A stretch of DNA of 63,268 bases, filler included, from Trichosphaerium sp. ATCC 40318 (GCA_038496445.1; 3 parts of 3 records of this genome joined end to end with filler, not necessarily neighbours in it), one strand, 5' to 3'; positions 15,653-39,274 are shown, numbered from the whole stretch's first letter. Numbers and translations are program-made. Notes: generated by a model not told the origin, from the letters alone.

Positions 15653-18600
15653 GTCTCCTTTTCTTTTTCTAATACATTCAACACCTGTTTCACACTATGG
15701 TCTACTTCAAATGAGTAATCTTTATGCCATAATGACACTGCTTCCATTCTTCGTGATGAGTATTGATTAATACTATCATCCGATATAGCATTTAACTCTT
15801 CTTGTGCCCACGGAGCTCTTGTCAGTGCATCCGCGTCTGTATGGGTGACACCCTTTTTATACACTAACACGAAATCAAATTGTTGTATTTTTAACAGCCA
15901 CCTTGCTAACATAGGTCGAGGATTGGGTAAATCCTGTAAATATTGTAGCGGTTTGTGATCTGTGTATACAATCAATTTGAATTTAGCAAACGACAGGTAT
16001 CCTCTAAACTCTTCTAACGCTAACACGATACCCAACATCTCTCTCTCAATGGTGGAATAATTCTTCTGTGGTTTAGAGAATGTCTTGCTGAAATATGCAA
16101 TGACATGTTCTCTTTTACCATGTCTCTGTACTAACGTTGCACCAGCTGCTACATTGGAGGCATCTACATGAATTTCAAACAGCTTTGAGAAGTCTGGATG
16201 CTTCAAGATAGGTGGTGATGACAACAGGTCTTTGATTTTCTCATAAGCCTTTTGTTGTTCTTTACCCCAGTACCACTTGATGTCTTTGTTCCGTAATCGA
16301 TTGATCGGTTCTACAATCTGTGCGTATTTCGGTACAAATTTGCGATAATACCCTGTAAGGCCTAAGCAGCGAGCTACTTCTTCTTTACTTGTAGGTCTTT
16401 TCGCTCTTTGTATTGCATCCGTTATACGAGGATTTGTAGATATCCCATCAGCGCTCACGATATGGCCCAAAAACTCAACTTGATCTTTAAATAAAACTGA
16501 TTTCTTCGCCTTCAATTTCATGTTATGTTCCTCCAATCTCTTGAACAATAATTTCAGGTGTACTAGATGTTCTTCAAAGGTATTACTGAACACTATAATA
16601 TCGTCGACGTAACAAAGAGGTGATAATAATATAATGAGCAACCATACAGTGAGTACGTACACTGCTTTGACAGCCCTCCCTTTAACTACGTCTGCTCCCT
16701 ATTTTTCCCTTTTCATATCTACCCTATCCTATTTTTTATGTAGATTTCAAAAAAGTTGGTTTGGTCAAATTTAGTCAAATACACACGAAATTATCTAACT
16801 TTTTTTATTTTTTAGTTTGGTTTTTTTACTTTATATTGTAGATTTTTTTGTTGTTTTATTAAATTGTTTGAGTTATGTAGTTGGTCCTATAAGTCTTACT
16901 TTCTGTTCTTTCTAGCCTTTCTTTTTCCTTTTTTACCCTTGGTGGTTTTTGGTAGATCAATTATTGTACCTTGCATCTTTTTGGTTCTTAAATCTTTGGC
17001 TTTAGGACATGGAGGTAATATTGGCTTCACTATTTCATTTTCTTCCAATAGCTGCTCTTCTGTATATAACAAATACTCACTTGAAGTCATCATATATGCT
17101 GGATATTTAGGCTTGTAACTTTCTTTTGATGCTTTGTCATGGGTCCTTAACAAGCAAGTAGGAAATTGTATAATTGTACCATCTTCTTTTTTCCAATAAT
17201 GACCAACACATTGATAACAATCTGCATATTTAACTCTGTTGTGACATCTAAAAAAAACAATGTTAACATCATTTAAAAAACCCTTTCACTTACATTTCTC
17301 TATGAGCATTCATAAATTCAGGCTCCAATGTTTGATGCCAGGGATTCACACACCAACCATTGCCACATTTATGAGAATAATGTATATCTCCTCTTTCAAA
17401 CTCATTGAAAAACACCCATTTTCCTCTTTCTCTGTCATACACTTCCATATCAAAAAAGTACCAGAACAAAAACTGCACAATGTACATAGAAAGCCTGGTT
17501 TGCATACTTGACCAATCAACCATAGGTCTATTACCCTCTGCACAAAACTTGTCACTTCTCCAACATTCATGCTTGTTGAGTTGGCAGTCAGGAGAAATTT
17601 TGCATTTTAATCTCCAACCTTCTATTTGATCTACACCGTGGGTACCTTTTAATATGTCCACATGTCCTTTTGTCAAAGCTCTGCAGGTCTTGACTCTTTT
17701 GGTTTTTTTATCTCTTTTCAATTTAGTGAATACAGGAGAGAACATTTTGCTTCTAAACTCATCTACATAATCAGAGTGTATTGTTGGCAAGGTATAATCT
17801 CTTGTACTAGAAGGGGTCTTTCTTTTGGCAGGAGAAGAGACAGACCTCTTTCTTTTTTTTGGAGAGGCGGATTTAGATCTGGTTCTGGAAGCAGGTAGAG
17901 ACATGATGTTGCAGTTGTATAAAAGTAAGTTTTATGGTATATAATAAAATTGATATATGTGGAATGCAACAGTAGTAAAATAGAAATGGGAATTTTTAAG
18001 TAATCCACCCTGTTTTCCTATGGGAAAAGTAGACGGAAAAACTCTTCCTTAATTCCCATTGAATTTATATGAAATTCCATAAGTATTACCCATAGAATTC
18101 TTAAAGTATTACTTTTGGAATTGTGTATGTATTTTATATAGAATTCTCTATGTATTCTTTATAGCATTTCTTAATGTATTTTTTGTAGATTTCAATAAAA
18201 AATACTTTTTCAATTACACAAAATATTTGTACTATTTCGATACTTTGGTTCAGATTTAGTGCAAAGTCATTTTATTTATTGATCATAATTTCATTACAAA
18301 ATACAAACATCCTAAATAACACGTACAAGTTAAATACATCATGTCTTCATAAACGAAAGAAGTAATTTGATCGCATTTGGTTTTGAGAGCCTGAACAATT
18401 GTTAATGCGTTTGTAAATGCTAAATTAAGAATGCGTAGGGTTTTTTGATAAATTAAGTGGAAATAAGCTTTAAAAACAACGTACTTGGAGTTAATGCTTT
18501 AAATACATTCTTTAATGGTGTAATAAGGCTGTTGCAATGCTTTAATCATCCTAAAACAGATAAGTAAGAGATATTTATGTTTAAGTGATTTTCCAAACCA

Positions 18601-21600
18601 CCTAAAACGTGTTCTCCGTTACTTTTTGGATTAACGCACTTTAACCTGTACCATTGGTTTTTGCACCTTTAATAATAGCATGTGGATATTGTTCACTAGA
18701 AAAACCTATGTACCTAAGGTGTCGATGGTTTTTTGCAAATATAAAACTAAACCCTAACCCTAACTTAATTTGTACTTTCATAAACCTCAACCCTAGCCCT
18801 AACCCTAACCCTAACTAAATTAGTACATTATTTGGTGGATTTTGTACAATAATTCTGAAAATTCTGTATTTAAGGGAATATTATGGTAATTCTATCAAAA
18901 ATCCCGCTATAAAAAAAAATAAAAATAAGAATTCTTCACAAATTACCTTAAAAATCCCTAAAACAAAGGAATTTAGTGGGATTTATATCCAAAATCCCGT
19001 TTTCATTTTACCACTGAAAGTGGTACACAATGTGGAATGGAATGCAAAATGGTACACAATGTGGAATGGAATGCAAAATGTAGAATGCAAAATGTGGAAT
19101 GCAGAATGCAGTGTGGTGCACAATGTGGAATGCAGTATGGTGCACAATGTGGAATGCAATATGGTACACAATGTGGAATGCTCAATGTGAAATACAAAAA
19201 GAGACACAATGTAGAATGCAAATAAAGAATAAAAAAAAAAAAAAAAAAAAAGAGAATAAAAAAGAAATGAAAAAAGAAGTGTTGAGCAAGGAGTTAATAC
19301 CTAATATACAGCGCTCATATTTATACACCAGATAGCTACAAGCATAGAGAATAAACTGCAAAAAAAATGAATCAAAAAGGAAGGATAGGGTAGATATGAA
19401 AAGGGAAAAATAGGGAGCAGACGTAGTTAAAGGGAGGGCTGTCAAAGCAGTGTACGTACTCACTGTATGGTTGCTCTATTATATTATTATCACCTCTTTG
19501 TTACGTCGACGATATTACCTCAAAGACACGTCTGCCAGAGTAGGCCTGACAACATCAGGTTCATATGTCTTTGGAAAGTTGCTTGCGCATTCTTAAGACC
19601 AAAGGGCATACCGACGCACTCGAACAGACCCCACTCTGTGGCAAAGGCTGTCTTATCAGCATCATTTGCATGCATTCGGATCTGCCAATACCCGGAGATT
19701 GCATCAAACGTACTGAAGAACTTAGCTCCAGCCAGTGCATTCATTAGATCATTTACTCTTGGTAACAGATGTACGTCCTTTTTCGTCACCTTGTTGAGTT
19801 GTCTGAAGTCAATGCAGAATCTCCATTCTCCATTGTTCTTTTTAACTAACACAACTGGTGAGGACCACTCTGATTTGGAGTACTTGATCTGTTTGTTCTC
19901 TAACATCTTTTCTATTTCTGCTTTTGCGATTTCTCTTTGTTTTGGGTTCATTCTTCTGTACGGCATACTAACCGGTCTTGTGCCTTTGTCAACAGGTATT
20001 CGGTGTTGTATTCCTTTAACCGCTCCTGTTTCCTTCAATGAATCAACAAATATGTGTTGGTAGCTCGCCATGAATTTGAAAGCTTGCAACTTTTGTTTCT
20101 CAGTGAGTCGGTTCCCGTTGACTTTGAATCTCTTTTGAGCTGCCTTGACATCTTCCATTGTTACATTTGCACACGCCCTTGCTATGTCTTTCTTTTGTTT
20201 AGCATAGTCAAAGTTCAATGAGCATACTTCTTCTCCTACACCCAACGCAGCAAAACTCGCAATGTTATACTTCGCTGGTATCCTCCTCTCTACATTACTC
20301 GGGTTCATGACATGCACTCTAACCATTCTTTTCCTAGCTCTGTCCACTGATCGACACAGCTGTAGACCCAGGTCATTCAATAATGCCGCATGTCCACCTT
20401 TATCTTCCAGTCTATGTGGTTCTACTATACCCACTTTTTCGTTGACTGGAATAGATAATTTGGCCACGAACGTACATTGTGAGTAAGCTGGTATCTTAAC
20501 AGCGTTAGTTGTCAACACGTTAGCAAACTCTGTCCTTCTATCATTCACTTGAGTACACGTGATAGGTGTCTCATCACCCTTGTAGTTGTGCAACAACAAC
20601 CGACCATAATCCAAGCACATGCCCCATCTCTTCAGCATTGTTGTTCCTAACAATATCTTGTACTTGAAGTTGTTGATGACAAAGCATGTCACAGGCATAG
20701 GCGTCTTACCGATCGCAATGGTTAACTTGATCACTCCCATCGATGGTATTTGTTTGTTATCTGCTGTGTAAATAGGTGGTGATGTCTTAGGTATAATACT
20801 TTTAGTCAGTCCCAACCTTTTTACCAGTCTTGAATCAACAATACACATGGATGCTCCTGAATCCATCAACGCATTAACTCTAACACCATTTACACTCATG
20901 TGTGCCTTTGTAACTGTATAATGAAATGCTTTGTTCTCACTCAACTCCTCACACATGTTCAAGAAATTCGCTGAAGTAGACAAGTGACATGACTGATCAA
21001 CTGAGGCCTTATACCAAAAACTTTTATTATCTCTTCTACTTCTACTCTTACTTCTACTCCTACTCCTGTTACGACTCCTATCACGGCTTCTCTCGCGACT
21101 CCTCTCACGTCTCCTGTCACGGCTTCTGTCACGGCTCCTATCACGGCTCCTGTCACGCCTGTCGCACCTACCATGTCGGTCGCGATCATCTCTTCTATCT
21201 CGGCGATCTTCCTCATCTCTGTCGTATCCATCATCATCTTCTTCACCATCTACATCCATCGCGTTCAGTTGTAGTCGCGTAGGACACACATCTTGAAAGT
21301 GCCCAATGCCTCCACATCTGTAACACTTGATGTTGATACGTGGTCTCGGTTGAGAAGGTCTACGATATTTGTCAATCTGATCTTGACCTTTGTAGCCTCT
21401 CCTTTTACTGTAGCCACTGTATCCACCATATCTGTGACCACCACCATGTTTACTGTGACCACCACCACTGTCTTGATGTTGTTGATCACGCCACTGTGCT
21501 TGTTGAGCATTGCGGTCATAATCATCCGTACATCTTCTCTTCGTGTCTCGCTCGTCATCATTGTCGGAGCCGTTTCTCTTCGTTGCCACCGAGTTGAGCG

Positions 21601-22534
21601 TCTCTATCCTTGATTTCTCTATCGCCGCCTTCAATCGTTTGCGTTCTTCATCTTTCCTCTTCTGTTCTGTGTCGCCCAGCTCCTTCTTATATGTGTACCA
21701 AGATGCTATCTTGTACACTGCAGCCATGGACGTATCTTGCAGCTTTTCTTTAAGCGTATCCACAATATACTGTCTCATCTCTGTACCAACACACTTCAGA
21801 AACGCTGTTGCCTTCTCCTTGTCGGTCATCATCGCCTTATCCGCCAAACTGAGAAAGTATTCATAAAATTTGGATACATTCTGGTTTTCTTGGATACACA
21901 TTTGAGCTACTTTCTCTTTAGCTCACATCATGTTGACCACCGTCTGGAAGCTATCCAATAAACTATAGATTGCCAATGTGTAATTCTTGTTGAACTTCAA
22001 ACTCCTGATGACTCGATGGGCTCGTCCTTTTATCCGAGAGTGTAGTACATACACGCATGCTTCTTGATTGCATTTGAACGTTGTACAGTACCTTTGCATC
22101 CTCGCCAAAAACTCTTCCAACTCTCCATGATCGTTGGAAAACACCTCAATGTCGGTTATCTTCTTACATCGTTGTGGTGTGCGATCTTTCTTGTACCAAT
22201 CCACTCCAACCGGTTTTTCTTCGCTGTCGTAGACCAAATGCGGCATCAAGCGTAAAACGGTGTTACGTTCTACATCATTGATATCCGTCAGTGATTCTAA
22301 CCGATCTAAGCGCCTTTTCTCTTCTTTCACACTATTTAATCTTCCTGACCTTTCCGATGATGAAGCTGAGCTACTGCTGCTCTCATCCGGTGTATCAGGT
22401 CCCTTCTCTTCCTTTTCTCTGTTGTCCTTTCGATCTTTGTGTTTACCCTTTTCTGGCTTCTTTTCGCTTTCTTCTTTGCCCTTTCCTTCATCCGTATCAC
22501 TATCCTCTTCCCCTTCTTTTTCGGAGCTTTTGGT
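15653..22534 (-). repeat. 6.9-kb inverted duplicate of 23382-30264 (probable fold-back chimera)
   Basis: All ORF coordinates mirror with sum 45917 and give identical proteins; the only difference noticed is a 1-bp homopolymer indel near 22510; runs into the contig end. Confidence 0.95.
16896..17904 (-). CDS. His-Cys box homing endonuclease (mirror copy of 28013-29021)
   Basis: Translation identical to the + strand copy. Confidence 0.8.
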
Positions 22535-23100
22535 ACTAAGTGTTTGAATCTATTCGTGTTAGCTTCAATAGTACGATTAGTATTGCGTGTCGTACCCAAC
22601 TTGTTGTAAGACTTCAGGAGGAGAAGCAGCGTGTGATTCAATAAAGATCCAAACTTGCCTCAAAAAAGCTTCAGCACCAGAAGCGTGCACTGCAAAGGTA
22701 CCAACTCCAACAGCTGCGCTTATGCCGCCAGTAAGAACACCGACCTAATGTGGGTTAGTTTTTTGCAGCCACGTTTTTGCATAAGTAAGTTAAAGATGTC
22801 GCGTGTCGTTTTAGGTTTCAAAAAAACTTGTGATATTTTTTTCACCACTAACACGTGGCATAATTACAAGAGAGTGCATGAACAAAAAAATGGACAAAGA
22901 AGCGTGTACGTACCACTGTGCCTGTTACTACTTTTATGGTGGCGTAGGAGTGAATTGTTATTGTCATACTTCCATCCGAAGCCGTTGTAAACGTTGCTTT
23001 GAATTCAGGCTAAACGGACATTAGACACTCTACTCAATATGCCTTTACTGATAAAGGCGCTACGAACGCTTTGACTTTTTTTTTTTTCCAATAACTATTA

Positions 23101-23191
23101 TGTAAGGAGTAAATAATGTAACTTAATGTACATGAGCTCACTTAGAGGAGAATAAATTAGTTGATATCACGTGACGGTTTTAGTCTTTACA
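23101..23191 (+). repeat. 5' LTR (91 bp)
   Basis: TGTAAGG...CTTTACA, identical to 32237-32327. Confidence 0.95.
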
Positions 23192-23194
23192 TTT

Positions 23195-23212
23195 TGGCGA
23201 CAGACGCGTAGA
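23195..23212 (+). promoter_or_regulatory. Primer binding site (TGGCGACAGACGCG...); tRNA identity not determined
   Basis: TGG-initiated sequence 3 nt after the 5' LTR. Confidence 0.7.
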
Positions 23213-23220
23213 TTTGAACC

Positions 23221-26200
23221 ATGTCTAAACGGGGAAGTAAAAAGGAGAAGAAATCAATTTATGTACCTAAGAAAAAGCAAGATGATATTGAAAAGGAGAT
23301 GTTAGAAGAGATAGAAGCGGCAAAAGATAAGAAGGAACGTCGAAAGGGAGATTCAAATAGTGAACAAAAACTAAAAGGGAAACCAAAAGCTCCGAAAAAG
23401 AAGGGGGAAGAGGATAGTGATACGGATGAAGGAAAGGGCAAAGAAGAAAGCGAAAAGAAGCCAGAAAAGGGTAAACACAAAGATCGAAAGGACAACAGAG
23501 AAAAGGAAGAGAAGGGACCTGATACACCGGATGAGAGCAGCAGTAGCTCAGCTTCATCATCGGAAAGGTCAGGAAGATTAAATAGTGTGAAAGAAGAGAA
23601 AAGGCGCTTAGATCGGTTAGAATCACTGACGGATATCAATGATGTAGAACGTAACACCGTTTTACGCTTGATGCCGCATTTGGTCTACGACAGCGAAGAA
23701 AAACCGGTTGGAGTGGATTGGTACAAGAAAGATCGCACACCACAACGATGTAAGAAGATAACCGACATTGAGGTGTTTTCCAACGATCATGGAGAGTTGG
23801 AAGAGTTTTTGGCGAGGATGCAAAGGTACTGTACAACGTTCAAATGCAATCAAGAAGCATGCGTGTATGTACTACACTCTCGGATAAAAGGACGAGCCCA
23901 TCGAGTCATCAGGAGTTTGAAGTTCAACAAGAATTACACATTGGCAATCTATAGTTTATTGGATAGCTTCCAGACGGTGGTCAACATGATGTGAGCTAAA
24001 GAGAAAGTAGCTCAAATGTGTATCCAAGAAAACCAGAATGTATCCAAATTTTATGAATACTTTCTCAGTTTGGCGGATAAGGCGATGATGACCGACAAGG
24101 AGAAGGCAACAGCGTTTCTGAAGTGTGTTGGTACAGAGATGAGACAGTATATTGTGGATACGCTTAAAGAAAAGCTGCAAGATACGTCCATGGCTGCAGT
24201 GTACAAGATAGCATCTTGGTACACATATAAGAAGGAGCTGGGCGACACAGAACAGAAGAGGAAAGATGAAGAACGCAAACGATTGAAGGCGGCGATAGAG
24301 AAATCAAGGATAGAGACGCTCAACTCGGTGGCAACGAAGAGAAACGGCTCCGACAATGATGACGAGCGAGACACGAAGAGAAGATGTACGGATGATTATG
24401 ACCGCAATGCTCAACAAGCACAGTGGCGTGATCAACAACATCAAGACAGTGGTGGTGGTCACAGTAAACATGGTGGTGGTCACAGATATGGTGGATACAG
24501 TGGCTACAGTAAAAGGAGAGGCTACAAAGGTCAAGATCAGATTGACAAATATCGTAGACCTTCTCAACCGAGACCACGTATCAACATCAAGTGTTACAGA
24601 TGTGGAGGCATTGGGCACTTTCAAGATGTGTGTCCTACGCGACTACAACTGAACGCGATGGATGTAGATGGTGAAGAAGATGATGATGGATACGACAGAG
24701 ATGAGGAAGATCGCCGAGATAGAAGAGATGATCGCGACCGACATGGTAGGTGCGACAGGCGTGACAGGAGCCGTGATAGGAGCCGTGACAGAAGCCGTGA
24801 CAGGAGACGTGAGAGGAGTCGCGAGAGAAGCCGTGATAGGAGTCGTAACAGGAGTAGGAGTAGAAGTAAGAGTAGAAGTAGAAGAGATAATAAAAGTTTT
24901 TGGTATAAGGCCTCAGTTGATCAGTCATGTCACTTGTCTACTTCAGCGAATTTCTTGAACATGTGTGAGGAGTTGAGTGAGAACAAAGCATTTCATTATA
25001 CAGTTACAAAGGCACACATGAGTGTAAATGGTGTTAGAGTTAATGCGTTGATGGATTCAGGAGCATCCATGTGTATTGTTGATTCAAGACTGGTAAAAAG
25101 GTTGGGACTGACTAAAAGTATTATACCTAAGACATCACCACCTATTTACACAGCAGATAACAAACAAATACCATCGATGGGAGTGATCAAGTTAACCATT
25201 GCGATCGGTAAGACGCCTATGCCTGTGACATGCTTTGTCATCAACAACTTCAAGTACAAGATATTGTTAGGAACAACAATGCTGAAGAGATGGGGCATGT
25301 GCTTGGATTATGGTCGGTTGTTGTTGCACAACTACAAGGGTGATGAGACACCTATCACGTGTACTCAAGTGAATGATAGAAGGACAGAGTTTGCTAACGT
25401 GTTGACAACTAACGCTGTTAAGATACCAGCTTACTCACAATGTACGTTCGTGGCCAAATTATCTATTCCAGTCAACGAAAAAGTGGGTATAGTAGAACCA
25501 CATAGACTGGAAGATAAAGGTGGACATGCGGCATTATTGAATGACCTGGGTCTACAGCTGTGTCGATCAGTGGACAGAGCTAGGAAAAGAATGGTTAGAG
25601 TGCATGTCATGAACCCGAGTAATGTAGAGAGGAGGATACCAGCGAAGTATAACATTGCGAGTTTTGCTGCGTTGGGTGTAGGAGAAGAAGTATGCTCATT
25701 GAACTTTGACTATGCTAAACAAAAGAAAGACATAGCAAGGGCGTGTGCAAATGTAACAATGGAAGATGTCAAGGCAGCTCAAAAGAGATTCAAAGTCAAC
25801 GGGAACCGACTCACTGAGAAACAAAAGTTGCAAGCTTTCAAATTCATGGCGAGCTACCAACACATATTTGTTGATTCATTGAAGGAAACAGGAGCGGTTA
25901 AAGGAATACAACACCGAATACCTGTTGACAAAGGCACAAGACCGGTTAGTATGCCGTACAGAAGAATGAACCCAAAACAAAGAGAAATCGCAAAAGCAGA
26001 AATAGAAAAGATGTTAGAGAACAAACAGATCAAGTACTCCAAATCAGAGTGGTCCTCACCAGTTGTGTTAGTTAAAAAGAACAATGGAGAATGGAGATTC
26101 TGCATTGACTTCAGACAACTCAACAAGGTGACGAAAAAGGACGTACATCTGTTACCAAGAGTAAATGATCTAATGAATGCACTGGCTGGAGCTAAGTTCT

Positions 26201-26397
26201 TCAGTACGTTTGATGCAATCTCCGGGTATTGGCAGATCCGAATGCATGCAAATGATGCTGATAAGACAGCCTTTGCCACAGAGTGGGGTCTGTTCGAGTG
26301 CGTCGGTATGCCCTTTGGTCTTAAGAATGCGCAAGCAACTTTCCAAAGACATATGAACCTGATGTTGTCAGGCCTACTCTGGCAGACGTGTCTTTGA
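23221..26397 (+). pseudogene. gag-pol 5' part: Gag, CCHC zinc knuckle, RD/RS repeat, aspartic protease, N-terminal RT; in-frame TGA at 23992-23994
   Basis: ORFs 23221-23994 and 24016-26397 are in the same frame; CYRCGGIGHFQDVC, LMDSGA, WRFCIDFRQLN, MPFGLKNA. Confidence 0.92.
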
Positions 26398-26695
26398 GGT
26401 AATATCGTCGACGTAACAAAGAGGTGATAATAATATAATAGAGCAACCATACAGTGAGTACGTACACTGCTTTGACAGCCCTCCCTTTAACTACGTCTGC
26501 TCCCTATTTTTCCCTTTTCATATCTACCCTATCCTTCCTTTTTGATTCATTTTTTTTGCAGTTTATTCTCTATGCTTGTAGCTATCTGGTGTATAAATAT
26601 GAGCGCTGTATATTAGGTATTAACTCCTTGCTCAACACTTCTTTTTTCATTTCTTTTTTATTCTCTTTTTTTTTTTTTTTTTTTTTATTCTTTAT

Positions 26696-26897
26696 TTGCA
26701 TTCTACATTGTGTCTCTTTTTGTATTTCACATTGAGCATTCCACATTGTGTACCATATTGCATTCCACATTGTGCACCATACTGCATTCCACATTGTGCA
26801 CCACACTGCATTCTGCATTCCACATTTTGCATTCTACATTTTGCATTCCATTCCACATTGTGTACCATTTTGCATTCCATTCCACATTGTGTACCAC
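26696..26897. repeat. Subterminal minisatellite, about 24-bp unit TGCATTCCACATTGTG(T/C)ACCA(T/C)A
   Basis: About 8 full or partial tandem units read directly. Confidence 0.9.
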
Positions 26898-27102
26898 TTT
26901 CAGTGGTAAAATGAAAACGGGATTTTGGATATAAATCCCACTAAATTCCTTTGTTTTAGGGATTTTTAAGGTAATTTGTGAAGAATTCTTATTTTTATTT
27001 TTTTTTATAGCGGGATTTTTGATAGAATTACCATAATATTCCCTTAAATACAGAATTTTCAGAATTATTGTACAAAATCCACCAAATAATGTACTAATTT
27101 AG

Positions 27103-27170
27103 TTAGGGTTAGGGTTAGGGCTAGGGTTGAGGTTTATGAAAGTACAAATTAAGTTAGGGTTAGGGTTTAG
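27103..27170 (+). repeat. Interstitial telomere-like TTAGGG repeats inside the element
   Basis: TTAGGGTTAGGGTTAGGGCTAGGGTTGAGG ... TTAGGGTTAGGGTTTAG. Confidence 0.85.
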
Positions 27171-28012
27171 TTTTATATTTGCAAAAAACCATCGACACCT
27201 TAGGTACATAGGTTTTTCTAGTGAACAATATCCACATGCTATTATTAAAGGTGCAAAAACCAATGGTACAGGTTAAAGTGCGTTAATCCAAAAAGTAACG
27301 GAGAACACGTTTTAGGTGGTTTGGAAAATCACTTAAACATAAATATCTCTTACTTATCTGTTTTAGGATGATTAAAGCATTGCAACAGCCTTATTACACC
27401 ATTAAAGAATGTATTTAAAGCATTAACTCCAAGTACGTTGTTTTTAAAGCTTATTTCCACTTAATTTATCAAAAAACCCTACGCATTCTTAATTTAGCAT
27501 TTACAAACGCATTAACAATTGTTCAGGCTCTCAAAACCAAATGCGATCAAATTACTTCTTTCGTTTATGAAGACATGATGTATTTAACTTGTACGTGTTA
27601 TTTAGGATGTTTGTATTTTGTAATGAAATTATGATCAATAAATAAAATGACTTTGCACTAAATCTGAACCAAAGTATCGAAATAGTACAAATATTTTGTG
27701 TAATTGAAAAAGTATTTTTTATTGAAATCTACAAAAAATACATTAAGAAATGCTATAAAGAATACATAGAGAATTCTATATAAAATACATACACAATTCC
27801 AAAAGTAATACTTTAAGAATTCTATGGGTAATACTTATGGAATTTCATATAAATTCAATGGGAATTAAGGAAGAGTTTTTCCGTCTACTTTTCCCATAGG
27901 AAAACAGGGTGGATTACTTAAAAATTCCCATTTCTATTTTACTACTGTTGCATTCCACATATATCAATTTTATTATATACCATAAAACTTACTTTTATAC
28001 AACTGCAACATC

Positions 28013-29021
28013 ATGTCTCTACCTGCTTCCAGAACCAGATCTAAATCCGCCTCTCCAAAAAAAAGAAAGAGGTCTGTCTCTTCTCCTGCCAAAAGAAAGA
28101 CCCCTTCTAGTACAAGAGATTATACCTTGCCAACAATACACTCTGATTATGTAGATGAGTTTAGAAGCAAAATGTTCTCTCCTGTATTCACTAAATTGAA
28201 AAGAGATAAAAAAACCAAAAGAGTCAAGACCTGCAGAGCTTTGACAAAAGGACATGTGGACATATTAAAAGGTACCCACGGTGTAGATCAAATAGAAGGT
28301 TGGAGATTAAAATGCAAAATTTCTCCTGACTGCCAACTCAACAAGCATGAATGTTGGAGAAGTGACAAGTTTTGTGCAGAGGGTAATAGACCTATGGTTG
28401 ATTGGTCAAGTATGCAAACCAGGCTTTCTATGTACATTGTGCAGTTTTTGTTCTGGTACTTTTTTGATATGGAAGTGTATGACAGAGAAAGAGGAAAATG
28501 GGTGTTTTTCAATGAGTTTGAAAGAGGAGATATACATTATTCTCATAAATGTGGCAATGGTTGGTGTGTGAATCCCTGGCATCAAACATTGGAGCCTGAA
28601 TTTATGAATGCTCATAGAGAAATGTAAGTGAAAGGGTTTTTTAAATGATGTTAACATTGTTTTTTTTAGATGTCACAACAGAGTTAAATATGCAGATTGT
28701 TATCAATGTGTTGGTCATTATTGGAAAAAAGAAGATGGTACAATTATACAATTTCCTACTTGCTTGTTAAGGACCCATGACAAAGCATCAAAAGAAAGTT
28801 ACAAGCCTAAATATCCAGCATATATGATGACTTCAAGTGAGTATTTGTTATATACAGAAGAGCAGCTATTGGAAGAAAATGAAATAGTGAAGCCAATATT
28901 ACCTCCATGTCCTAAAGCCAAAGATTTAAGAACCAAAAAGATGCAAGGTACAATAATTGATCTACCAAAAACCACCAAGGGTAAAAAAGGAAAAAGAAAG
29001 GCTAGAAAGAACAGAAAGTAA
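28013..29021 (+). CDS. His-Cys box (His-Me finger) homing endonuclease, 320 aa; exons 28013-28623 and 28670-29021
   Basis: 46-nt GTAAGT...TTTAG intron; spliced product ECW...SHKCGNGWCVNPWHQTLEPEFMNAHREICHN...CYQCVGH...PTC matches the SHxCx4CxNPxH-E-N-R-C pattern of I-PpoI-family enzymes; basic NLS-like termini. Confidence 0.88.
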
Positions 29022-29304
29022 GACTTATAGGACCAACTACATAACTCAAACAATTTAATAAAACAACAAAAAAATCTACAATATAAAGTAAAAAAACCAA
29101 ACTAAAAAATAAAAAAAGTTAGATAATTTCGTGTGTATTTGACTAAATTTGACCAAACCAACTTTTTTGAAATCTACATAAAAAATAGGATAGGGTAGAT
29201 ATGAAAAGGGAAAAATAGGGAGCAGACGTAGTTAAAGGGAGGGCTGTCAAAGCAGTGTACGTACTCACTGTATGGTTGCTCATTATATTATTATCACCTC
29301 TTTG

Positions 29305-32071
29305 TTACGTCGACGATATTATAGTGTTCAGTAATACCTTTGAAGAACATCTAGTACACCTGAAATTATTGTTCAAGAGATTGGAGGAACATAACATGAA
29401 ATTGAAGGCGAAGAAATCAGTTTTATTTAAAGATCAAGTTGAGTTTTTGGGCCATATCGTGAGCGCTGATGGGATATCTACAAATCCTCGTATAACGGAT
29501 GCAATACAAAGAGCGAAAAGACCTACAAGTAAAGAAGAAGTAGCTCGCTGCTTAGGCCTTACAGGGTATTATCGCAAATTTGTACCGAAATACGCACAGA
29601 TTGTAGAACCGATCAATCGATTACGGAACAAAGACATCAAGTGGTACTGGGGTAAAGAACAACAAAAGGCTTATGAGAAAATCAAAGACCTGTTGTCATC
29701 ACCACCTATCTTGAAGCATCCAGACTTCTCAAAGCTGTTTGAAATTCATGTAGATGCCTCCAATGTAGCAGCTGGTGCAACGTTAGTACAGAGACATGGT
29801 AAAAGAGAACATGTCATTGCATATTTCAGCAAGACATTCTCTAAACCACAGAAGAATTATTCCACCATTGAGAGAGAGATGTTGGGTATCGTGTTAGCGT
29901 TAGAAGAGTTTAGAGGATACCTGTCGTTTGCTAAATTCAAATTGATTGTATACACAGATCACAAACCGCTACAATATTTACAGGATTTACCCAATCCTCG
30001 ACCTATGTTAGCAAGGTGGCTGTTAAAAATACAACAATTTGATTTCGTGTTAGTGTATAAAAAGGGTGTCACCCATACAGACGCGGATGCACTGACAAGA
30101 GCTCCGTGGGCACAAGAAGAGTTAAATGCTATATCGGATGATAGTATTAATCAATACTCATCACGAAGAATGGAAGCAGTGTCATTATGGCATAAAGATT
30201 ACTCATTTGAAGTAGACCATAGTGTGAAACAGGTGTTGAATGTATTAGAAAAAGAAAAGGAGACGGAACATATTAACTGGTCGGAGTGTCAGGCAAAAGA
30301 CCCTGAACTTACAGCATACATCCAGTTTTTAACTAAAGGAAAAGTCCCTCCATATGTCATGAAACAAAAGAACTTTAGAAGAGACGTGTTTGTTACCTTC
30401 ACTCGTAGATTAAAATATGACATGGATACAGGAGTACTGTACCATGTTAATAGATCACGAGGAGGGTTCGGAAACAAAGCACCATTACAAATAGTTGTAC
30501 CACAAGCTTTACAGCCATACATACTTCGACAATGTCATGATTTGCCTTTTGCAGGACATCTAGGATTTGTGAAGACATATGCTAAAGTAATACAACGATT
30601 TTATTGGGCAGGTGTATATTCAGACACAAAGGAATGGTGTCGTACATGTCGTTTGTGTCAGAGAGGTAAAATATCACGATTACCAAAACCAGGTTTTCTA
30701 GTGAATTTTCCGATACTGGAACCGATGCAATTGGTAGCTATGGATATTGTTGGACCCTTACCAGAGACACGTAAAGGCAACAAATATCTACTGGTGATCA
30801 CAGATCACTTTACTAAATGGGTAGATGTGTATGCAATACCTAGACATAAAGCAGTAGACGTAGCACCAATATTTGTGAAAGAGTTTTGTTTTCGGTATGG
30901 TATACCAAATAGAGTGTTGACAGATCAAGGAGGTGACTTTACAGGAGACCTCATGAAAGAAGTGTTCAAAATACTACGAATTGAAGGTAGTAGAACAGCA
31001 GCTTTCCATCCACAGACAGATGGACAGGTAGAAAGATTTAATCACACTCTAGTAGAAATTCTCAGAGCATTTGTTAATGAAAAACAAAATGACTGGGACT
31101 ACTGGGTACCATACGCGTTATATGCATACAGAACAGCAGTCCACCATGCAACTGGATATGCTCCATATGCAATGATGTTTGGCAGAGAACCCAGGTTACC
31201 CATAGATATGATATCTAACGAAATCATTGAGATTGAAGATAAATACAACATGGGTAATTGGGCAGAAGTGTTAGCACATAGATTGCGTTATGCATACCAA
31301 ATAGCGAGAGAACACATCCTCAAAGCTAAAAAGCAACAGGCGAAGTATTACAATGAACGAACACGTCATGTAAACTTTAAGCCAGGGCAGTTAGTGTATG
31401 TATTCGTACCTCAGGTGAAAGTAGGACAAAAACAGAAGTTAGCAAAACGATGGAGAGGTCCCTATGAGATTTTGGAGTTGATGGGTGCTAATACAGCATT
31501 GATCAATCTACCAGAAGCTAGTAGAATGAGTCGTGTCATTAACTTCAGACGCCTAAAACCATACATTGACTCATTTTTGAGACCGGAAGGGGCTCCGGAC
31601 AAAGATGAAGTAATGCGTAAGTTTGAAGGCAGAGAGGTAGAATTTCATGACCAAGACAGGAGTGAGAACTTCGTTGATGAGGAGGAGAGAGTATTAAGAG
31701 AGTCAGGAGATGAAATTACAGCCACGAAAGAGCTGACAAAGCAGATAAGAAGAGTGACGCAAGAAGATAAAGAGAGTAGGGAACCAGTAAAGGACTCACA
31801 AAGAGGATATGAACATCGGATAGACATCCTTTTAGAGCTATTGCGAGATGTGTTGCAATCAGCCAGGATAGTAACTAAAGATGATAACAAATCCATTGTG
31901 AAAAGTTTGATTGATAAAGGTAGCCCTTACATGCGAAGCAGTAGCACGCAGAAGGAGCTATTATCACAAATGTCCAAGTGTAATACAAATGGGAGTTTTA
32001 TTAAGTGGTTACAGAGGATTATAAAAGAAGAGAAAGAAGTGTTTAAAAGAGAGAGACGTTTACGAGACTAG
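29305..32071 (+). pseudogene. pol 3' part: RT (YVDD onward), RNase H, integrase (HHCC, DDE, GPY); no chromodomain seen
   Basis: YVDD, FLGH, DAS, YSTIERE, TDHKPL, H..AGH...CRLC, MDIVGP, TDQG, ERFN, WRGPY. Confidence 0.95.
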
Positions 32072-32218
32072 ATATAAATTGACCTCCATATTTATGGTTT
32101 AATGGTTGCTAAGGGTTTCCAATATCTCAGTCAAGTAAACAGCAAAGATAGAATTACGTGAACCAAAGAGTCATCTAAAACTGATGGAGTTCAACACTCT
32201 CACGTGAGGACACGCTCT

Positions 32219-32233
32219 AAAGAAAGAGGGGAG
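32219..32233 (+). promoter_or_regulatory. Polypurine tract
   Basis: AAAGAAAGAGGGGAG, 3 nt before the 3' LTR. Confidence 0.85.
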
Positions 32234-32236
32234 TTA

Positions 32237-32327
32237 TGTAAGGAGTAAATAATGTAACTTAATGTACATGAGCTCACTTAGAGGAGAATAAATTAGTTGA
32301 TATCACGTGACGGTTTTAGTCTTTACA
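32237..32327 (+). repeat. 3' LTR (91 bp)
   Basis: Identical to the 5' LTR. Confidence 0.95.
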
Positions 32328-33099
32328 ATTACGCACTCGAAAATTTACATGGGCGCCTTTCTTGCGAGCCTCTACAGTATACATTCTGTTTTTGTTTGTT
32401 ACCCGCCAACCGTTGGCTTGCATCCATTTTGAAAGGTCGTGGCCGGGGTGAGCTTTGTTGTATCCGGTGTACTTTCTTGTTTCTCGCAAATTGTAGACGT
32501 CCGTCATTGTGTTGTTAACCTAATATGTAGAAAATGCAGAAAACGTTTGAAAAGTACGCAAATTTCCAGTTGTGCTACACAGAAAAGCTGTTATTGGCGT
32601 TTGGCGTACCGACATCTCGTTGTTGAGACATAAAAAAAGGAGTCATTTCTTCCCACTTTTAAAGGAAAAGATCTTTCTACCGATCTTTTGACGTACGTGA
32701 CGCAACAATAGTAACCTGAATTACCCCTTCCAATGCAAGTGCACCCTGAATAAAATATGAAGTCGCATATTTTTGAGATCTCGATGTCTCTTTTTCACTG
32801 ACATTCATCTGACTTCGGTGTTCACCAATTGAACTTTTTGGTCATGTGAGTTTACAGTACTATGTTGTGGTACTGTTTGGACTGTTGCGCGCAGTTTTAA
32901 ACGGCTTTTGCGTTTAAAAGGTGTAGAACGAACTACGCTCTATCCCTAAATGGCCTCGTTGCTTTCACAACGAATTTTTCAGCTAGACAACAAAAACGGC
33001 CAGTAATTGTAAAGTGCAACTTTTGCTTTGTAGCCACAAAAGGGATCCGTACTACCTATTTGCAAGCGTGCCATATTATCGAAATAAACGAAAACGCAA

Positions 33100-38709: not shown

Positions 38710-39235
38710 CAACAGCGAGCTTGCCGCGGCATTAGAACACATATATCACGTGTTCGCATGTCGCGCTAGTTGGCGGTTGGTTTTGGTACACAATTAAATT
38801 GTGTACTTTTTTTTTAATTTTTTTTTTGTTGTTTTGCTTTTTTTACAGACTGCGAGCTCGCTGTACAATTTTAAACACGCTTTTTACGTGTTCGTACATG
38901 ACTGCGAGCTCGCGGTCGGTTTTTGTACACATAAAAAGTGTCTACTTTTTTAAAAACCGTTTTTTTTTTTGAAAGTCTTGCTTTATAACTGACTGCTTGC
39001 TTGGTATATGGTATACAACACATGTTTATCGTGTTCGTACCTGACCTCGAGCTCGCGGTCGGTTTTCGTACACATAAAAAGTGTGTACTTTTTTAAAAAC
39101 CGTTTTTTTTTTTGAAAGTCTTGCTTTATAACTGACTGCAAGCTTGCCGTTGTGTATGTAACACGTTTTTAATGTGTTCGTTTCCGACCGCGAGCTCGAG
39201 GTCATACTTTCCGCACGGAAAAAACGTGTTTGTAT
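38710..39235. repeat. About 143-bp tandem repeat (3.5-4 units)
   Basis: GAGCTCG anchor at 38906, 39049 and 39192; two units nearly identical. Confidence 0.85.
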
Positions 39236-39274
39236 ATTTATTTAATGTGCCATCTTCTAATTACTCTTTTTAGC

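What the first reader, a model, noticed from the sequence alone, without database searches (positions are those of the whole stretch)
26385..29311. The 5-bp TSD is the exact centre of a 19-bp symmetric site
Seen: the reconstructed empty site is GACGT-GT-CTTTG-TT-ACGTC, with perfect 5-bp inverted arms placed symmetrically around the duplicated CTTTG (chance roughly 4^-5 for a given spacing). Insertion separates the two arms, which would make the occupied allele immune. Known: His-Cys box enzymes act as homodimers on pseudo-palindromes, and the Naegleria enzymes (I-NjaI group) recognise about 19-bp partly symmetric sites and leave 5-nt staggered ends. Inference: the element's own nuclease made the break into which the element was inserted.
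Basis: partly seen in the sequence, partly recalled or inferred. Interest (0 to 1): 0.88.

Follow-up and report, generated by a model that had tools for sequence, protein, structure and literature searches.

The report
Nuclease cassette inside retrotransposon RT gene
A 2.9-kb inverted-repeat element whose only gene is an I-PpoI-type (His-Cys box) nuclease sits in the catalytic-motif coding sequence of a young gypsy-type retrotransposon. The 5-bp duplication and partly symmetric site are real, but a single insertion cannot show that the element's own nuclease made the break.

Summary
GACGT (26385-89) and ACGTC (29307-11) flank two copies of CTTTG (26392-96, 29300-04).

Removing the insert and one CTTTG restores a 1715-aa pol ORF. 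The restored ORF has the spacing that 102 of 106 homologues show (FQR-x16-Y.DD), so the duplication is real.

The symmetry is weak:
- Only 6 of 9 pairs match.
- It occurs at about 0.2-1.3% of local positions, depending on how freely it is defined.
- The duplication can also be read as 6 bp (TCTTTG), which moves the centre by half a base.
- Palindromic motifs centred on the duplication are general for DDE transposases and integrases, so symmetry does not point to a homodimeric nuclease.

- The inverted repeat is 143 bp, and its outer 22 bp at the left end are an inverted copy of the RT flank on the right. The left junction is therefore complex.
- The locus lies in a 6.86-kb perfect palindrome, so the second copy in the piece is not independent.

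The nuclease gene is intact: 320 aa, one 46-bp intron, and the full His-Cys box pattern. No other insertions could be retrieved.

Verdict: a plausible new variant, a His-Cys box nuclease cassette targeting a retrotransposon RT. The mechanism is unproven.

The parts
23101..32325 (+). Host Ty3/gypsy LTR retrotransposon. It has identical ~92-bp LTRs (TG..CA) within 23098-23194 and 32234-32330, a 4-bp flank repeat ATTA, gag from 23221 and pol from 24016.
26385..26396 (.). Left half of the reconstructed site: GACGT GT CTTTG. It codes for Q-T-C-L of RT; CTTTG is the left copy of the duplication.
26397..26399 (.). AGG (AGGT if the shared T at 26400 is counted). It repeats the first 3-4 nt of the element end and sits between the duplication and the flank-derived segment.
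   Evidence: read directly from the sequence
26400..26421 (.). 22-bp exact reverse complement of the RT flank 29300-29321, including CAAAG and GACGT. This is host-derived sequence inside the left inverted repeat.
   Evidence: (I2, 40 nt at 100%)
26422..26542 (.). Left terminal inverted repeat proper (AGGTGATAATAAT...). It differs from the right copy by a 1-nt indel.
26698..26912 (.). Degenerate 12-bp tandem repeat (GCATTCCACATTGTG-like), preceded by a long T run. Non-coding.
26901..27681 (.). Non-coding stretch with TTAGGG-like repeats (27100-27170). It is the only part of the element found in public runs X1 and X2, at 95-99% identity.
28013..28623 (+). Nuclease exon 1. It includes SHKCGNGWCVNPWHQTLEPEFMNAHRE.
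28624..28669 (+). 46-bp spliceosomal intron (GTAAGT...TTTTTTTTAG).
   Evidence: Splicing keeps the Asn+6=Cys spacing seen in the intronless transcript P0002.
28670..29021 (+). Nuclease exon 2: second Cys/His cluster, FPTCLL motif, Lys-rich tail and stop codon. AATAAA lies at 29057-29062.
29180..29299 (.). Right terminal inverted repeat proper (...ATTATTATCACCT).
29300..29321 (.). RT flank that is mirrored at the left end. It holds CTTTG (right copy of the duplication), TT, ACGTC (right arm) and the palindrome CGTCGACG, and codes for (L)CYVDDI.
15653..22513 (-). Perfect inverted copy of 23404-30264, cut by the edge of the piece. It contains a second, non-independent copy of the element at 16596-19517.

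Best explanation
The element is a selfish cassette of 2903 bp (26397-29299). It is bounded by roughly 120-bp inverted repeats and carries one gene, an intact I-PpoI-type His-Cys box nuclease.

Proposed mechanism, all of it inferred:
1. The nuclease recognises the DNA that codes for the W..CL.YVDD core of this retrotransposon family's reverse transcriptase.
2. It cuts with a 5-nt stagger across CTTTG.
3. The cassette enters the break by break repair. In the founding event this was end-joining that kept both overhangs, which produced the 5-bp duplication.
4. Later spread would be by copying from an occupied to an empty retrotransposon copy (homing). The duplication and the odd left junction would then be inherited unchanged.
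5. The extra 25 bp at the left junction is a repair scar. A break a few bases inside the left repeat was extended on the other repeat as template, 22 nt out into its flank, and then end-joined.

Shown directly: the insertion, the duplication, the partial symmetry, the nuclease family and its intactness, and the youth of host and insert.
For: - The duplication is proved by ORF restoration and homologue spacing.
- The only coding capacity is the nuclease. There is no ORF of 55 aa or more outside repeats between 26540 and 28012.
- The His-Cys box pattern is complete across the splice site. Pfam PF05551 is hit. P0002 is related to our protein at E=9e-13, and P0002 aligns to I-PpoI 96-142.
- A 5-nt 3' stagger is documented for I-NjaI, I-NanI, I-NitI, I-DirII and I-DsqI, and a 19-bp partly symmetric site for I-NjaI (PMC9548176).
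- The target is the most conserved stretch of a multicopy gene, as is usual for homing endonuclease targets.
- Symmetry is at about the 1% level.
- No intact site is left in the occupied locus.
- The messy left junction, templated from the other end, looks like break repair rather than clean transposase chemistry.
- The host's own integrase makes 4-bp, not 5-bp, duplications.
- Identical LTRs, near-identical inverted repeats and intact ORFs indicate a recent event.
Against: - There is only one independent insertion. The copy in the palindrome is a duplicate.
- Inverted repeats plus a target duplication are the hallmark of DDE transposition, and palindromic target motifs centred on the duplication are general for such enzymes (PMC3276498).
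- Homing leaves no duplication. 3' overhangs need unusual processing to be duplicated.
- The duplication may be 6 bp.
- Nothing shows that the inverted repeats have a role in nuclease-driven mobility.
- The structure prediction of the homologue failed (pLDDT 38), so dimer or fold evidence is lacking.
- The assembly around the locus is suspicious because of the perfect 6.9-kb palindrome at the edge of the piece.
Confidence: 0.4

Rival explanations
1. The element is a non-autonomous inverted-repeat DNA transposon, inserted by a DDE transposase encoded elsewhere. The 5-bp duplication is the ordinary product of staggered strand transfer. The partial palindrome reflects the two-fold symmetry of the transpososome, or chance. 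The nuclease is cargo or an accessory, as in KolobokP.
For: - It has 143-bp inverted repeats and a 5-bp duplication.
- Palindromic target motifs that extend beyond the duplication are found for all TIR and LTR families studied (PMC3276498, PMC2577343).
- There is precedent for a His-Cys box-like nuclease carried by a DDE transposon (KolobokP, PMC9587614).
- There is precedent for TIR transposons that target multicopy genes (Dada, PMC3706591).
- Diverged copies (95-99%) of part of the element exist in public runs.
Against: - There is no transposase gene in the element.
- The ends (AGGTG...) and the 5-bp duplication match no superfamily that I could name with confidence (my own knowledge, not tested).
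- Landing in the single most conserved RT motif is an odd coincidence for a non-specific transposon.
- The left junction is not a clean strand-transfer product.
Confidence: 0.3
2. This was a one-off capture. The cassette was pasted by end-joining into a random break in this retrotransposon copy, or into its cDNA, unrelated to the nuclease's specificity. Any further copies arise by segmental duplication or by hitch-hiking on retrotransposition. The symmetry is chance.
For: - The symmetry is only about 1%-level and was chosen after the fact.
- The complex, templated left junction is typical of error-prone end-joining.
- The only second copy seen is a segmental inverted duplicate.
- The element's CpG observed/expected ratio is 0.33, against 0.76 in the host retrotransposon, which suggests a different history.
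Against: - A precise 5-bp duplication matches the stagger of this enzyme family.
- The intact nuclease gene and near-identical repeats suggest an active element rather than debris.
- The position is in a highly conserved motif.
Confidence: 0.2
3. It is an assembly artefact. The odd left junction, and possibly the inverted repeats, come from misassembly of long reads, as may the 6.9-kb perfect palindrome.
For: A perfect 6861-bp inverted repeat runs to the edge of the piece.
Against: - The insert has coherent biology: an intact spliced gene, a poly(A) signal, and exact restoration of the ORF on removal.
- A 25-bp segment that exactly mirrors the other junction is not a typical consensus error.
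- The palindrome has an 890-bp unique spacer, unlike fold-back reads.
Confidence: 0.05

Closest known systems
Nuclear His-Cys box homing endonucleases of group I introns (I-PpoI; I-NjaI, I-NanI and I-NitI; I-DirII; I-DsqI)
   Same: - The catalytic and zinc-binding pattern is the same: Ser-His, Cys-x4-Cys, NP.H, Glu, Asn, Arg, then Cys at Asn+6 and a second Cys/His cluster.
- The gene is interrupted by a small (~46-50 bp) spliceosomal intron and carries its own poly(A) signal, as in several myxomycete genes of this family.
- The target is a conserved multicopy gene.
- The 5-bp duplication equals their 5-nt stagger.
- The 19-bp partly symmetric site resembles that of I-NjaI.
   Different: - It is not in a group I intron (no ribozyme found) and not in rDNA.
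- It is flanked by long inverted repeats and a target duplication.
- The insertion destroys the host ORF instead of being spliced out.
- The protein is longer (320 aa) and very diverged: phmmer finds no PDB hit for exon 1.
KolobokP DNA transposons (PMC9587614)
   Same: It is a eukaryotic mobile element outside rDNA that carries an I-PpoI-like His-Me/His-Cys nuclease. The nuclease is proposed to contribute to the element's propagation.
   Different: KolobokP also has a DDE transposase, long terminal direct repeats and TTAA duplications. None of these is present here.
Target-specific TIR transposons such as Dada (PMC3706591)
   Same: Inverted repeats, a short duplication, and insertion at one position of a multicopy conserved gene.
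   Different: Dada encodes a DDE transposase and targets small RNA genes. Here there is no transposase, and the target is a retrotransposon RT.

Membership tests
His-Cys box (I-PpoI-type) homing endonucleases | The beta-beta-alpha-metal active site with catalytic His (H98) and metal-binding Asn (N119) | tested here: met
   SH at residues 177-178 and N at 199, in the pattern SH.C.{4}C.NP.H.{3}E.{4}N.{2}R.{2}C. P0002 aligns to I-PpoI 96-142. Our protein matches P0002 at E=9e-13.
His-Cys box (I-PpoI-type) homing endonucleases | Two zinc sites built from eight conserved His/Cys residues | tested here: inconclusive
   The equivalents of C100, C105, H110 and C125 are present. Exon 2 supplies further Cys/His (ADCYQCVGH...FPTC), but with spacing different from I-PpoI and P0002. 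The C41 equivalent was not assigned. The structure model failed.
His-Cys box (I-PpoI-type) homing endonucleases | Pfam PF05551 match above the curated cut-off | tested here: met
   Exon 1 alone scores 27.9 bits against a cut-off of 27. P0002 scores 52.6 bits. Caveat: PF05551 also covers I-HmuI-like HNH enzymes (PMC5714182). The Cys at Asn+6 distinguishes our protein from those.
His-Cys box (I-PpoI-type) homing endonucleases | Encoded within a nuclear group I intron in rDNA | tested here: not met
   The Rfam scan of 26300-29400 found no group I intron. The host gene is a retrotransposon RT.
His-Cys box (I-PpoI-type) homing endonucleases | A homodimer that cuts a pseudo-palindromic site and leaves a 4-5-nt 3' overhang at the insertion site | not testable with these tools
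   Only indirect evidence: the 5-bp duplication and 6 of 9 symmetric pairs.
Class II TIR DNA transposons | Terminal inverted repeats and a target-site duplication | tested here: met
   143-bp inverted repeat, of which about 121 bp is element-proper. 5-bp (or 6-bp) duplication.
Class II TIR DNA transposons | A DDE (or other known) transposase, either in the element or in an autonomous partner | tested here: not met
   There is no such ORF in the element. A partner elsewhere in the genome could not be searched for.
Class II TIR DNA transposons | Multiple copies at different loci, each with its own duplication | not testable with these tools
   Collection scans found nothing. Public runs hold only 26901-27681.
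KolobokP | Long terminal direct repeats, TTAA duplication and a DDE transposase alongside the nuclease | tested here: not met
   No direct terminal repeats, a CTTTG duplication, and no transposase.

The most novel reading that the evidence does not exclude
The His-Cys box nuclease is the element's only mobility enzyme and acts like a restriction-ligation transposase.

- In an occupied site, each junction keeps one half-site plus the central CTTTG.
- Cutting both junctions would release the cassette with 5-nt 3' overhangs that are cohesive with a freshly cut empty RT site.
- It would also leave donor ends that religate to a perfect empty site.
- The 'target duplication' would then be carried in the overhangs.

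The element would be a hyperparasite that moves or homes among retrotransposon copies and inactivates their reverse transcriptase.
Probability: 0.08. Interest if true: 0.9.

Novelty: new variant of a known kind. Interest (0 to 1): 0.55.

Why it matters
Nuclear His-Cys box endonucleases are known almost only from group I introns in rDNA. One exception rides on a DDE transposon (KolobokP).

An intron-less cassette aimed at the YVDD-coding core of a multicopy retrotransposon would be new in two ways. It would be a new niche for homing endonucleases, namely a selfish element that parasitises and disables another selfish element. It would also be a new natural nuclease with a defined ~19-bp site.

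Whether the element spreads by homing, by end-joining or by a borrowed transposase is directly testable. That needs the remaining copies in the source genome and a simple cleavage assay.

Tried and rejected
- **Looking for other insertions or empty sites.**
  - Exact-match scans for a 27-nt repeat core found nothing in metagenome, genome or viral collections.
  - A protein-pattern scan of metagenomes found nothing.
  - The word-indexed protein search with exon 1 found nothing.
  - The exhaustive phmmer search gave one true relative, P0002. A further search added P0124. Both sit on short transcript-like contigs without flanks.
  - Public runs X1-X3 hold only 26901-27681 and show no junctions or joints.
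- **Retrotransposon relatives.** They are only ~35% identical, so no empty site at the DNA level is available. They were used for spacing only.
- **Structure.** The AlphaFold model of P0002 from a 3-row alignment was unusable (pLDDT 37.7), so no fold search was run.
- **Rejected: the element spans 26400-29321 and supplies YVDD itself.** The frame runs on across 29321/29322, and there would otherwise be a TGA and no YVDD.
- **Rejected: the insert is a spliceosomal intron of the RT.** An in-frame TGA lies before the only plausible 5' splice site.
- **Rejected: a second gene or transposase lies in 26540-28012**.
- **Rejected: the 143-bp tandem repeat at 38818-39246 is related to the inverted repeats**.
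Full report
**What is there**

The finding lies inside a Ty3/gypsy LTR retrotransposon.
- Its two ~92-bp LTRs are identical (within 23098-23194 and 32234-32330) and it has a 4-bp flank repeat ATTA.
- gag starts at 23221 and pol at 24016.
- Pfam places RVT_1 profile positions 1-141 at the end of the ORF that stops at 26397, and positions 150-205 at the start of the ORF that resumes at 29297. RNase H and integrase follow.
- Between the two halves lie 2903 bp (26397-29299) of AT-rich DNA: GC 32%, CpG observed/expected 0.33, against 0.76 for the retrotransposon.

**The observation**

I tested whether CTTTG is truly duplicated.
- Joining 26396 to 29305 gives one uninterrupted 1715-aa pol ORF reading ...FQRHMNLMLSGLLWQTCLCYVDDIIVFS.
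- Among the 123 proteins held at that point (120 of them RT homologues), 106 matched the F[QEC][RKS]...[YF].DD pattern. Of those, 102 have exactly 16 residues between FQR and Y.DD and share GL.W..CL.Y.DD.
- The reconstruction has the same 16 residues and the same pattern.
- The duplication is therefore real, and the insertion lies within the codons for C-L-C, immediately before YVDD, which is the most conserved stretch of the enzyme.

**How strong is the symmetry?**

- Six of nine positions around the central T are complementary. The next outer pair is not.
- I scanned all 13,793 centres in the non-redundant local sequence. The exact configuration (5-nt arms, spacer 2) occurs at 0.22% of them. 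Arms of 5 or more at any spacer 0-6 occur at 0.95%. Six or more of nine pairs occur at 1.3%.
- This is unusual, but it is a post-hoc statistic on one site.
- Both CTTTG copies are preceded by T, so the duplication can equally be read as 6 bp TCTTTG. The site is then off-centre by half a base. The 5-bp reading rests only on the A/T pair at the tips of the inverted repeats.
- The right arm also overlaps a perfect palindrome, CGTCGACG, that codes for YVDD.

1. The inverted repeat does not stop at the duplication.
   - Arms 26400-26439 and 29282-29321 are 100% complementary, and 26441-26542 pairs with 29180-29281. The total is 143 bp with one indel.
   - The outer 22 bp on the right (29300-29321) are RT coding sequence, (L)CYVDDI, in frame with what follows.
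   - The 22 bp at the left (26400-26421) are therefore an inverted copy of host flank.
   - The left junction reads ...GTCTTTG | AGG | TAATATCGTCGACGTAACAAAG | AGGTGATAAT....
   - This is a normal-looking junction (CTTTG|AGGT) interrupted by 25 bp that are the exact reverse complement of the right junction.
   - As a result, both ends of the element abut the same half-site (GACGTAACAAAG|AGGTG).
2. The locus lies in a large perfect palindrome. Positions 15653-22513 are the perfect reverse complement of 23404-30264: 6861 bp, zero differences, cut by the edge of the piece. The second copy of the element in the piece is part of a segmental inverted duplication or an assembly artefact. It is not a second insertion event.

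**The gene**

- The only coding capacity is one gene: exon 1 at 28013-28623, a 46-bp intron (GTAAGT...TTTTTTTTAG), exon 2 at 28670-29021, and AATAAA at 29057. The product is 320 aa.
- Exon 1 hits Pfam PF05551 above its cut-off.
- The spliced product contains SHKCGNGWCVNPWHQTLEPEFMNAHREIC. This is the pattern Ser-His, Cys-x4-Cys, Asn-Pro-x-His, Glu, Asn, Arg, then Cys at Asn+6, and it spans the splice junction.
- An exhaustive phmmer search of 1.8 billion representatives found only three hits. One of them, P0002 (328 aa, from a metatranscriptome contig), is a true full-length relative. P0124 is 83% identical to P0002.
- P0002 aligns to I-PpoI residues 96-142 with Ser97, His98, Cys100, Cys105, His110, Glu114, Asn119, Cys125, Cys132, His134 and Cys138 all matched.
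- The KolobokP supplementary alignment of His-Cys enzymes shows the same pattern.
- PF05551 also covers I-HmuI-like HNH enzymes (PMC5714182). The Cys at Asn+6 and the downstream Cys/His cluster place this protein with the I-PpoI group.
- The second zinc cluster has different spacing from I-PpoI, and the structure prediction failed (pLDDT 38). Full membership therefore rests on sequence motifs alone.
- No group I ribozyme is present.

**Background facts checked**

- PMC9548176 states that nuclear homing endonucleases are His-Cys enzymes that act as zinc-coordinating homodimers and leave tetra- or pentanucleotide 3' overhangs.
- It lists pentanucleotide overhangs for I-NjaI, I-NitI, I-NanI, I-DirII and I-DsqI.
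- It cites Elde et al. 1999 for a 19-bp partially symmetric I-NjaI site.
- It also reports that the I-DsqI site has no detectable symmetry.
- It notes that small spliceosomal introns of 47-51 bp and poly(A) signals are common in these genes, as here.

**Why the inference is not secured**

1. There is one independent event. Every attempt to retrieve other copies or empty sites failed.
2. Palindromic target motifs centred on, and extending beyond, the duplication are a general property of TIR transposons and LTR elements, because their enzymes also act with two-fold symmetry (PMC3276498, PMC2577343). Symmetry does not discriminate between a nuclease and a transposase.
3. Inverted repeats plus a duplication are the classic signature of DDE transposition. 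Recombinational homing leaves no duplication, and duplicating a 3' overhang requires end-joining that preserves both overhangs.
4. The duplication length is ambiguous (5 or 6 bp).

**What favours a break-repair origin**

- The element has no transposase.
- The host integrase makes 4-bp duplications.
- The target is exactly the kind of site homing endonucleases choose.
- The left junction is not a clean strand-transfer product. It is a templated insertion copied from the other end.
- The simplest account of that junction (inference) is this. A break 3-4 nt inside the left repeat was extended using the identical right repeat as template, 22 nt out into its flank. It was then end-joined to the retained AGG(T).

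**Verdict**

A non-autonomous transposon moved by a transposase in trans is the close rival (about 0.3). A one-off capture into an unrelated break comes next (about 0.2).
- The object itself is an intact His-Cys box nuclease cassette outside any intron or rDNA, lodged in the catalytic core of a young retrotransposon. I found nothing like it in the literature searched, so it is a new variant of a known kind.
- The decisive data are the other copies in the source genome and a cleavage assay.

Noticed in passing
window 15653-22513 vs 23404-30264: There is a perfect 6861-bp inverted repeat with zero mismatches. It has an ~890-bp unique spacer that holds the 5' LTR, 587 bp of upstream flank and the first 183 bp of gag. 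The left arm runs to the edge of the piece. It is either a very recent inverted segmental duplication of the retrotransposon plus insert, or a contig-end assembly artefact.
   Followed up: partly
window 26901-27681: This is the only part of the element present in public runs X1 and X2, as short contigs 95-99% identical. It is non-coding and contains TTAGGG-like repeats. Coverage ends ~40 nt after an AATAAA at 27638. It may be a separate repeat family or a transcribed non-coding unit inside the element.
   Followed up: partly
window 26397-29299: The element is strongly CpG-depleted (observed/expected 0.33). The host retrotransposon is at 0.76 and the downstream DNA at 0.95. GC is 32%. This suggests a different evolutionary or methylation history.
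   Followed up: no
window 38818-39246: There are three tandem copies of a 143-bp unit (78% and 62% identity to the first) at the right edge of the piece. They are unrelated to the element's inverted repeats.
   Followed up: partly
window 23195-23220: A putative primer-binding site TGGCGACAGACGCGTAGATTTGAACC lies 3 nt after the 5' LTR. A polypurine tract AAAGAAAGAGGGGAG lies before the 3' LTR. The LTRs are unusually short (~92 bp).
   Followed up: no
L001 1-1198 and L002: The only clear relatives of the nuclease (P0002 and P0124, 83% identical to each other) come from short transcript-like contigs with 5' UTR and a poly(A) signal. One is from a JGI metatranscriptome and one from SRA run SRR14039914. 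An expressed, intron-free form of this gene family therefore exists in an unidentified eukaryote.
   Followed up: partly
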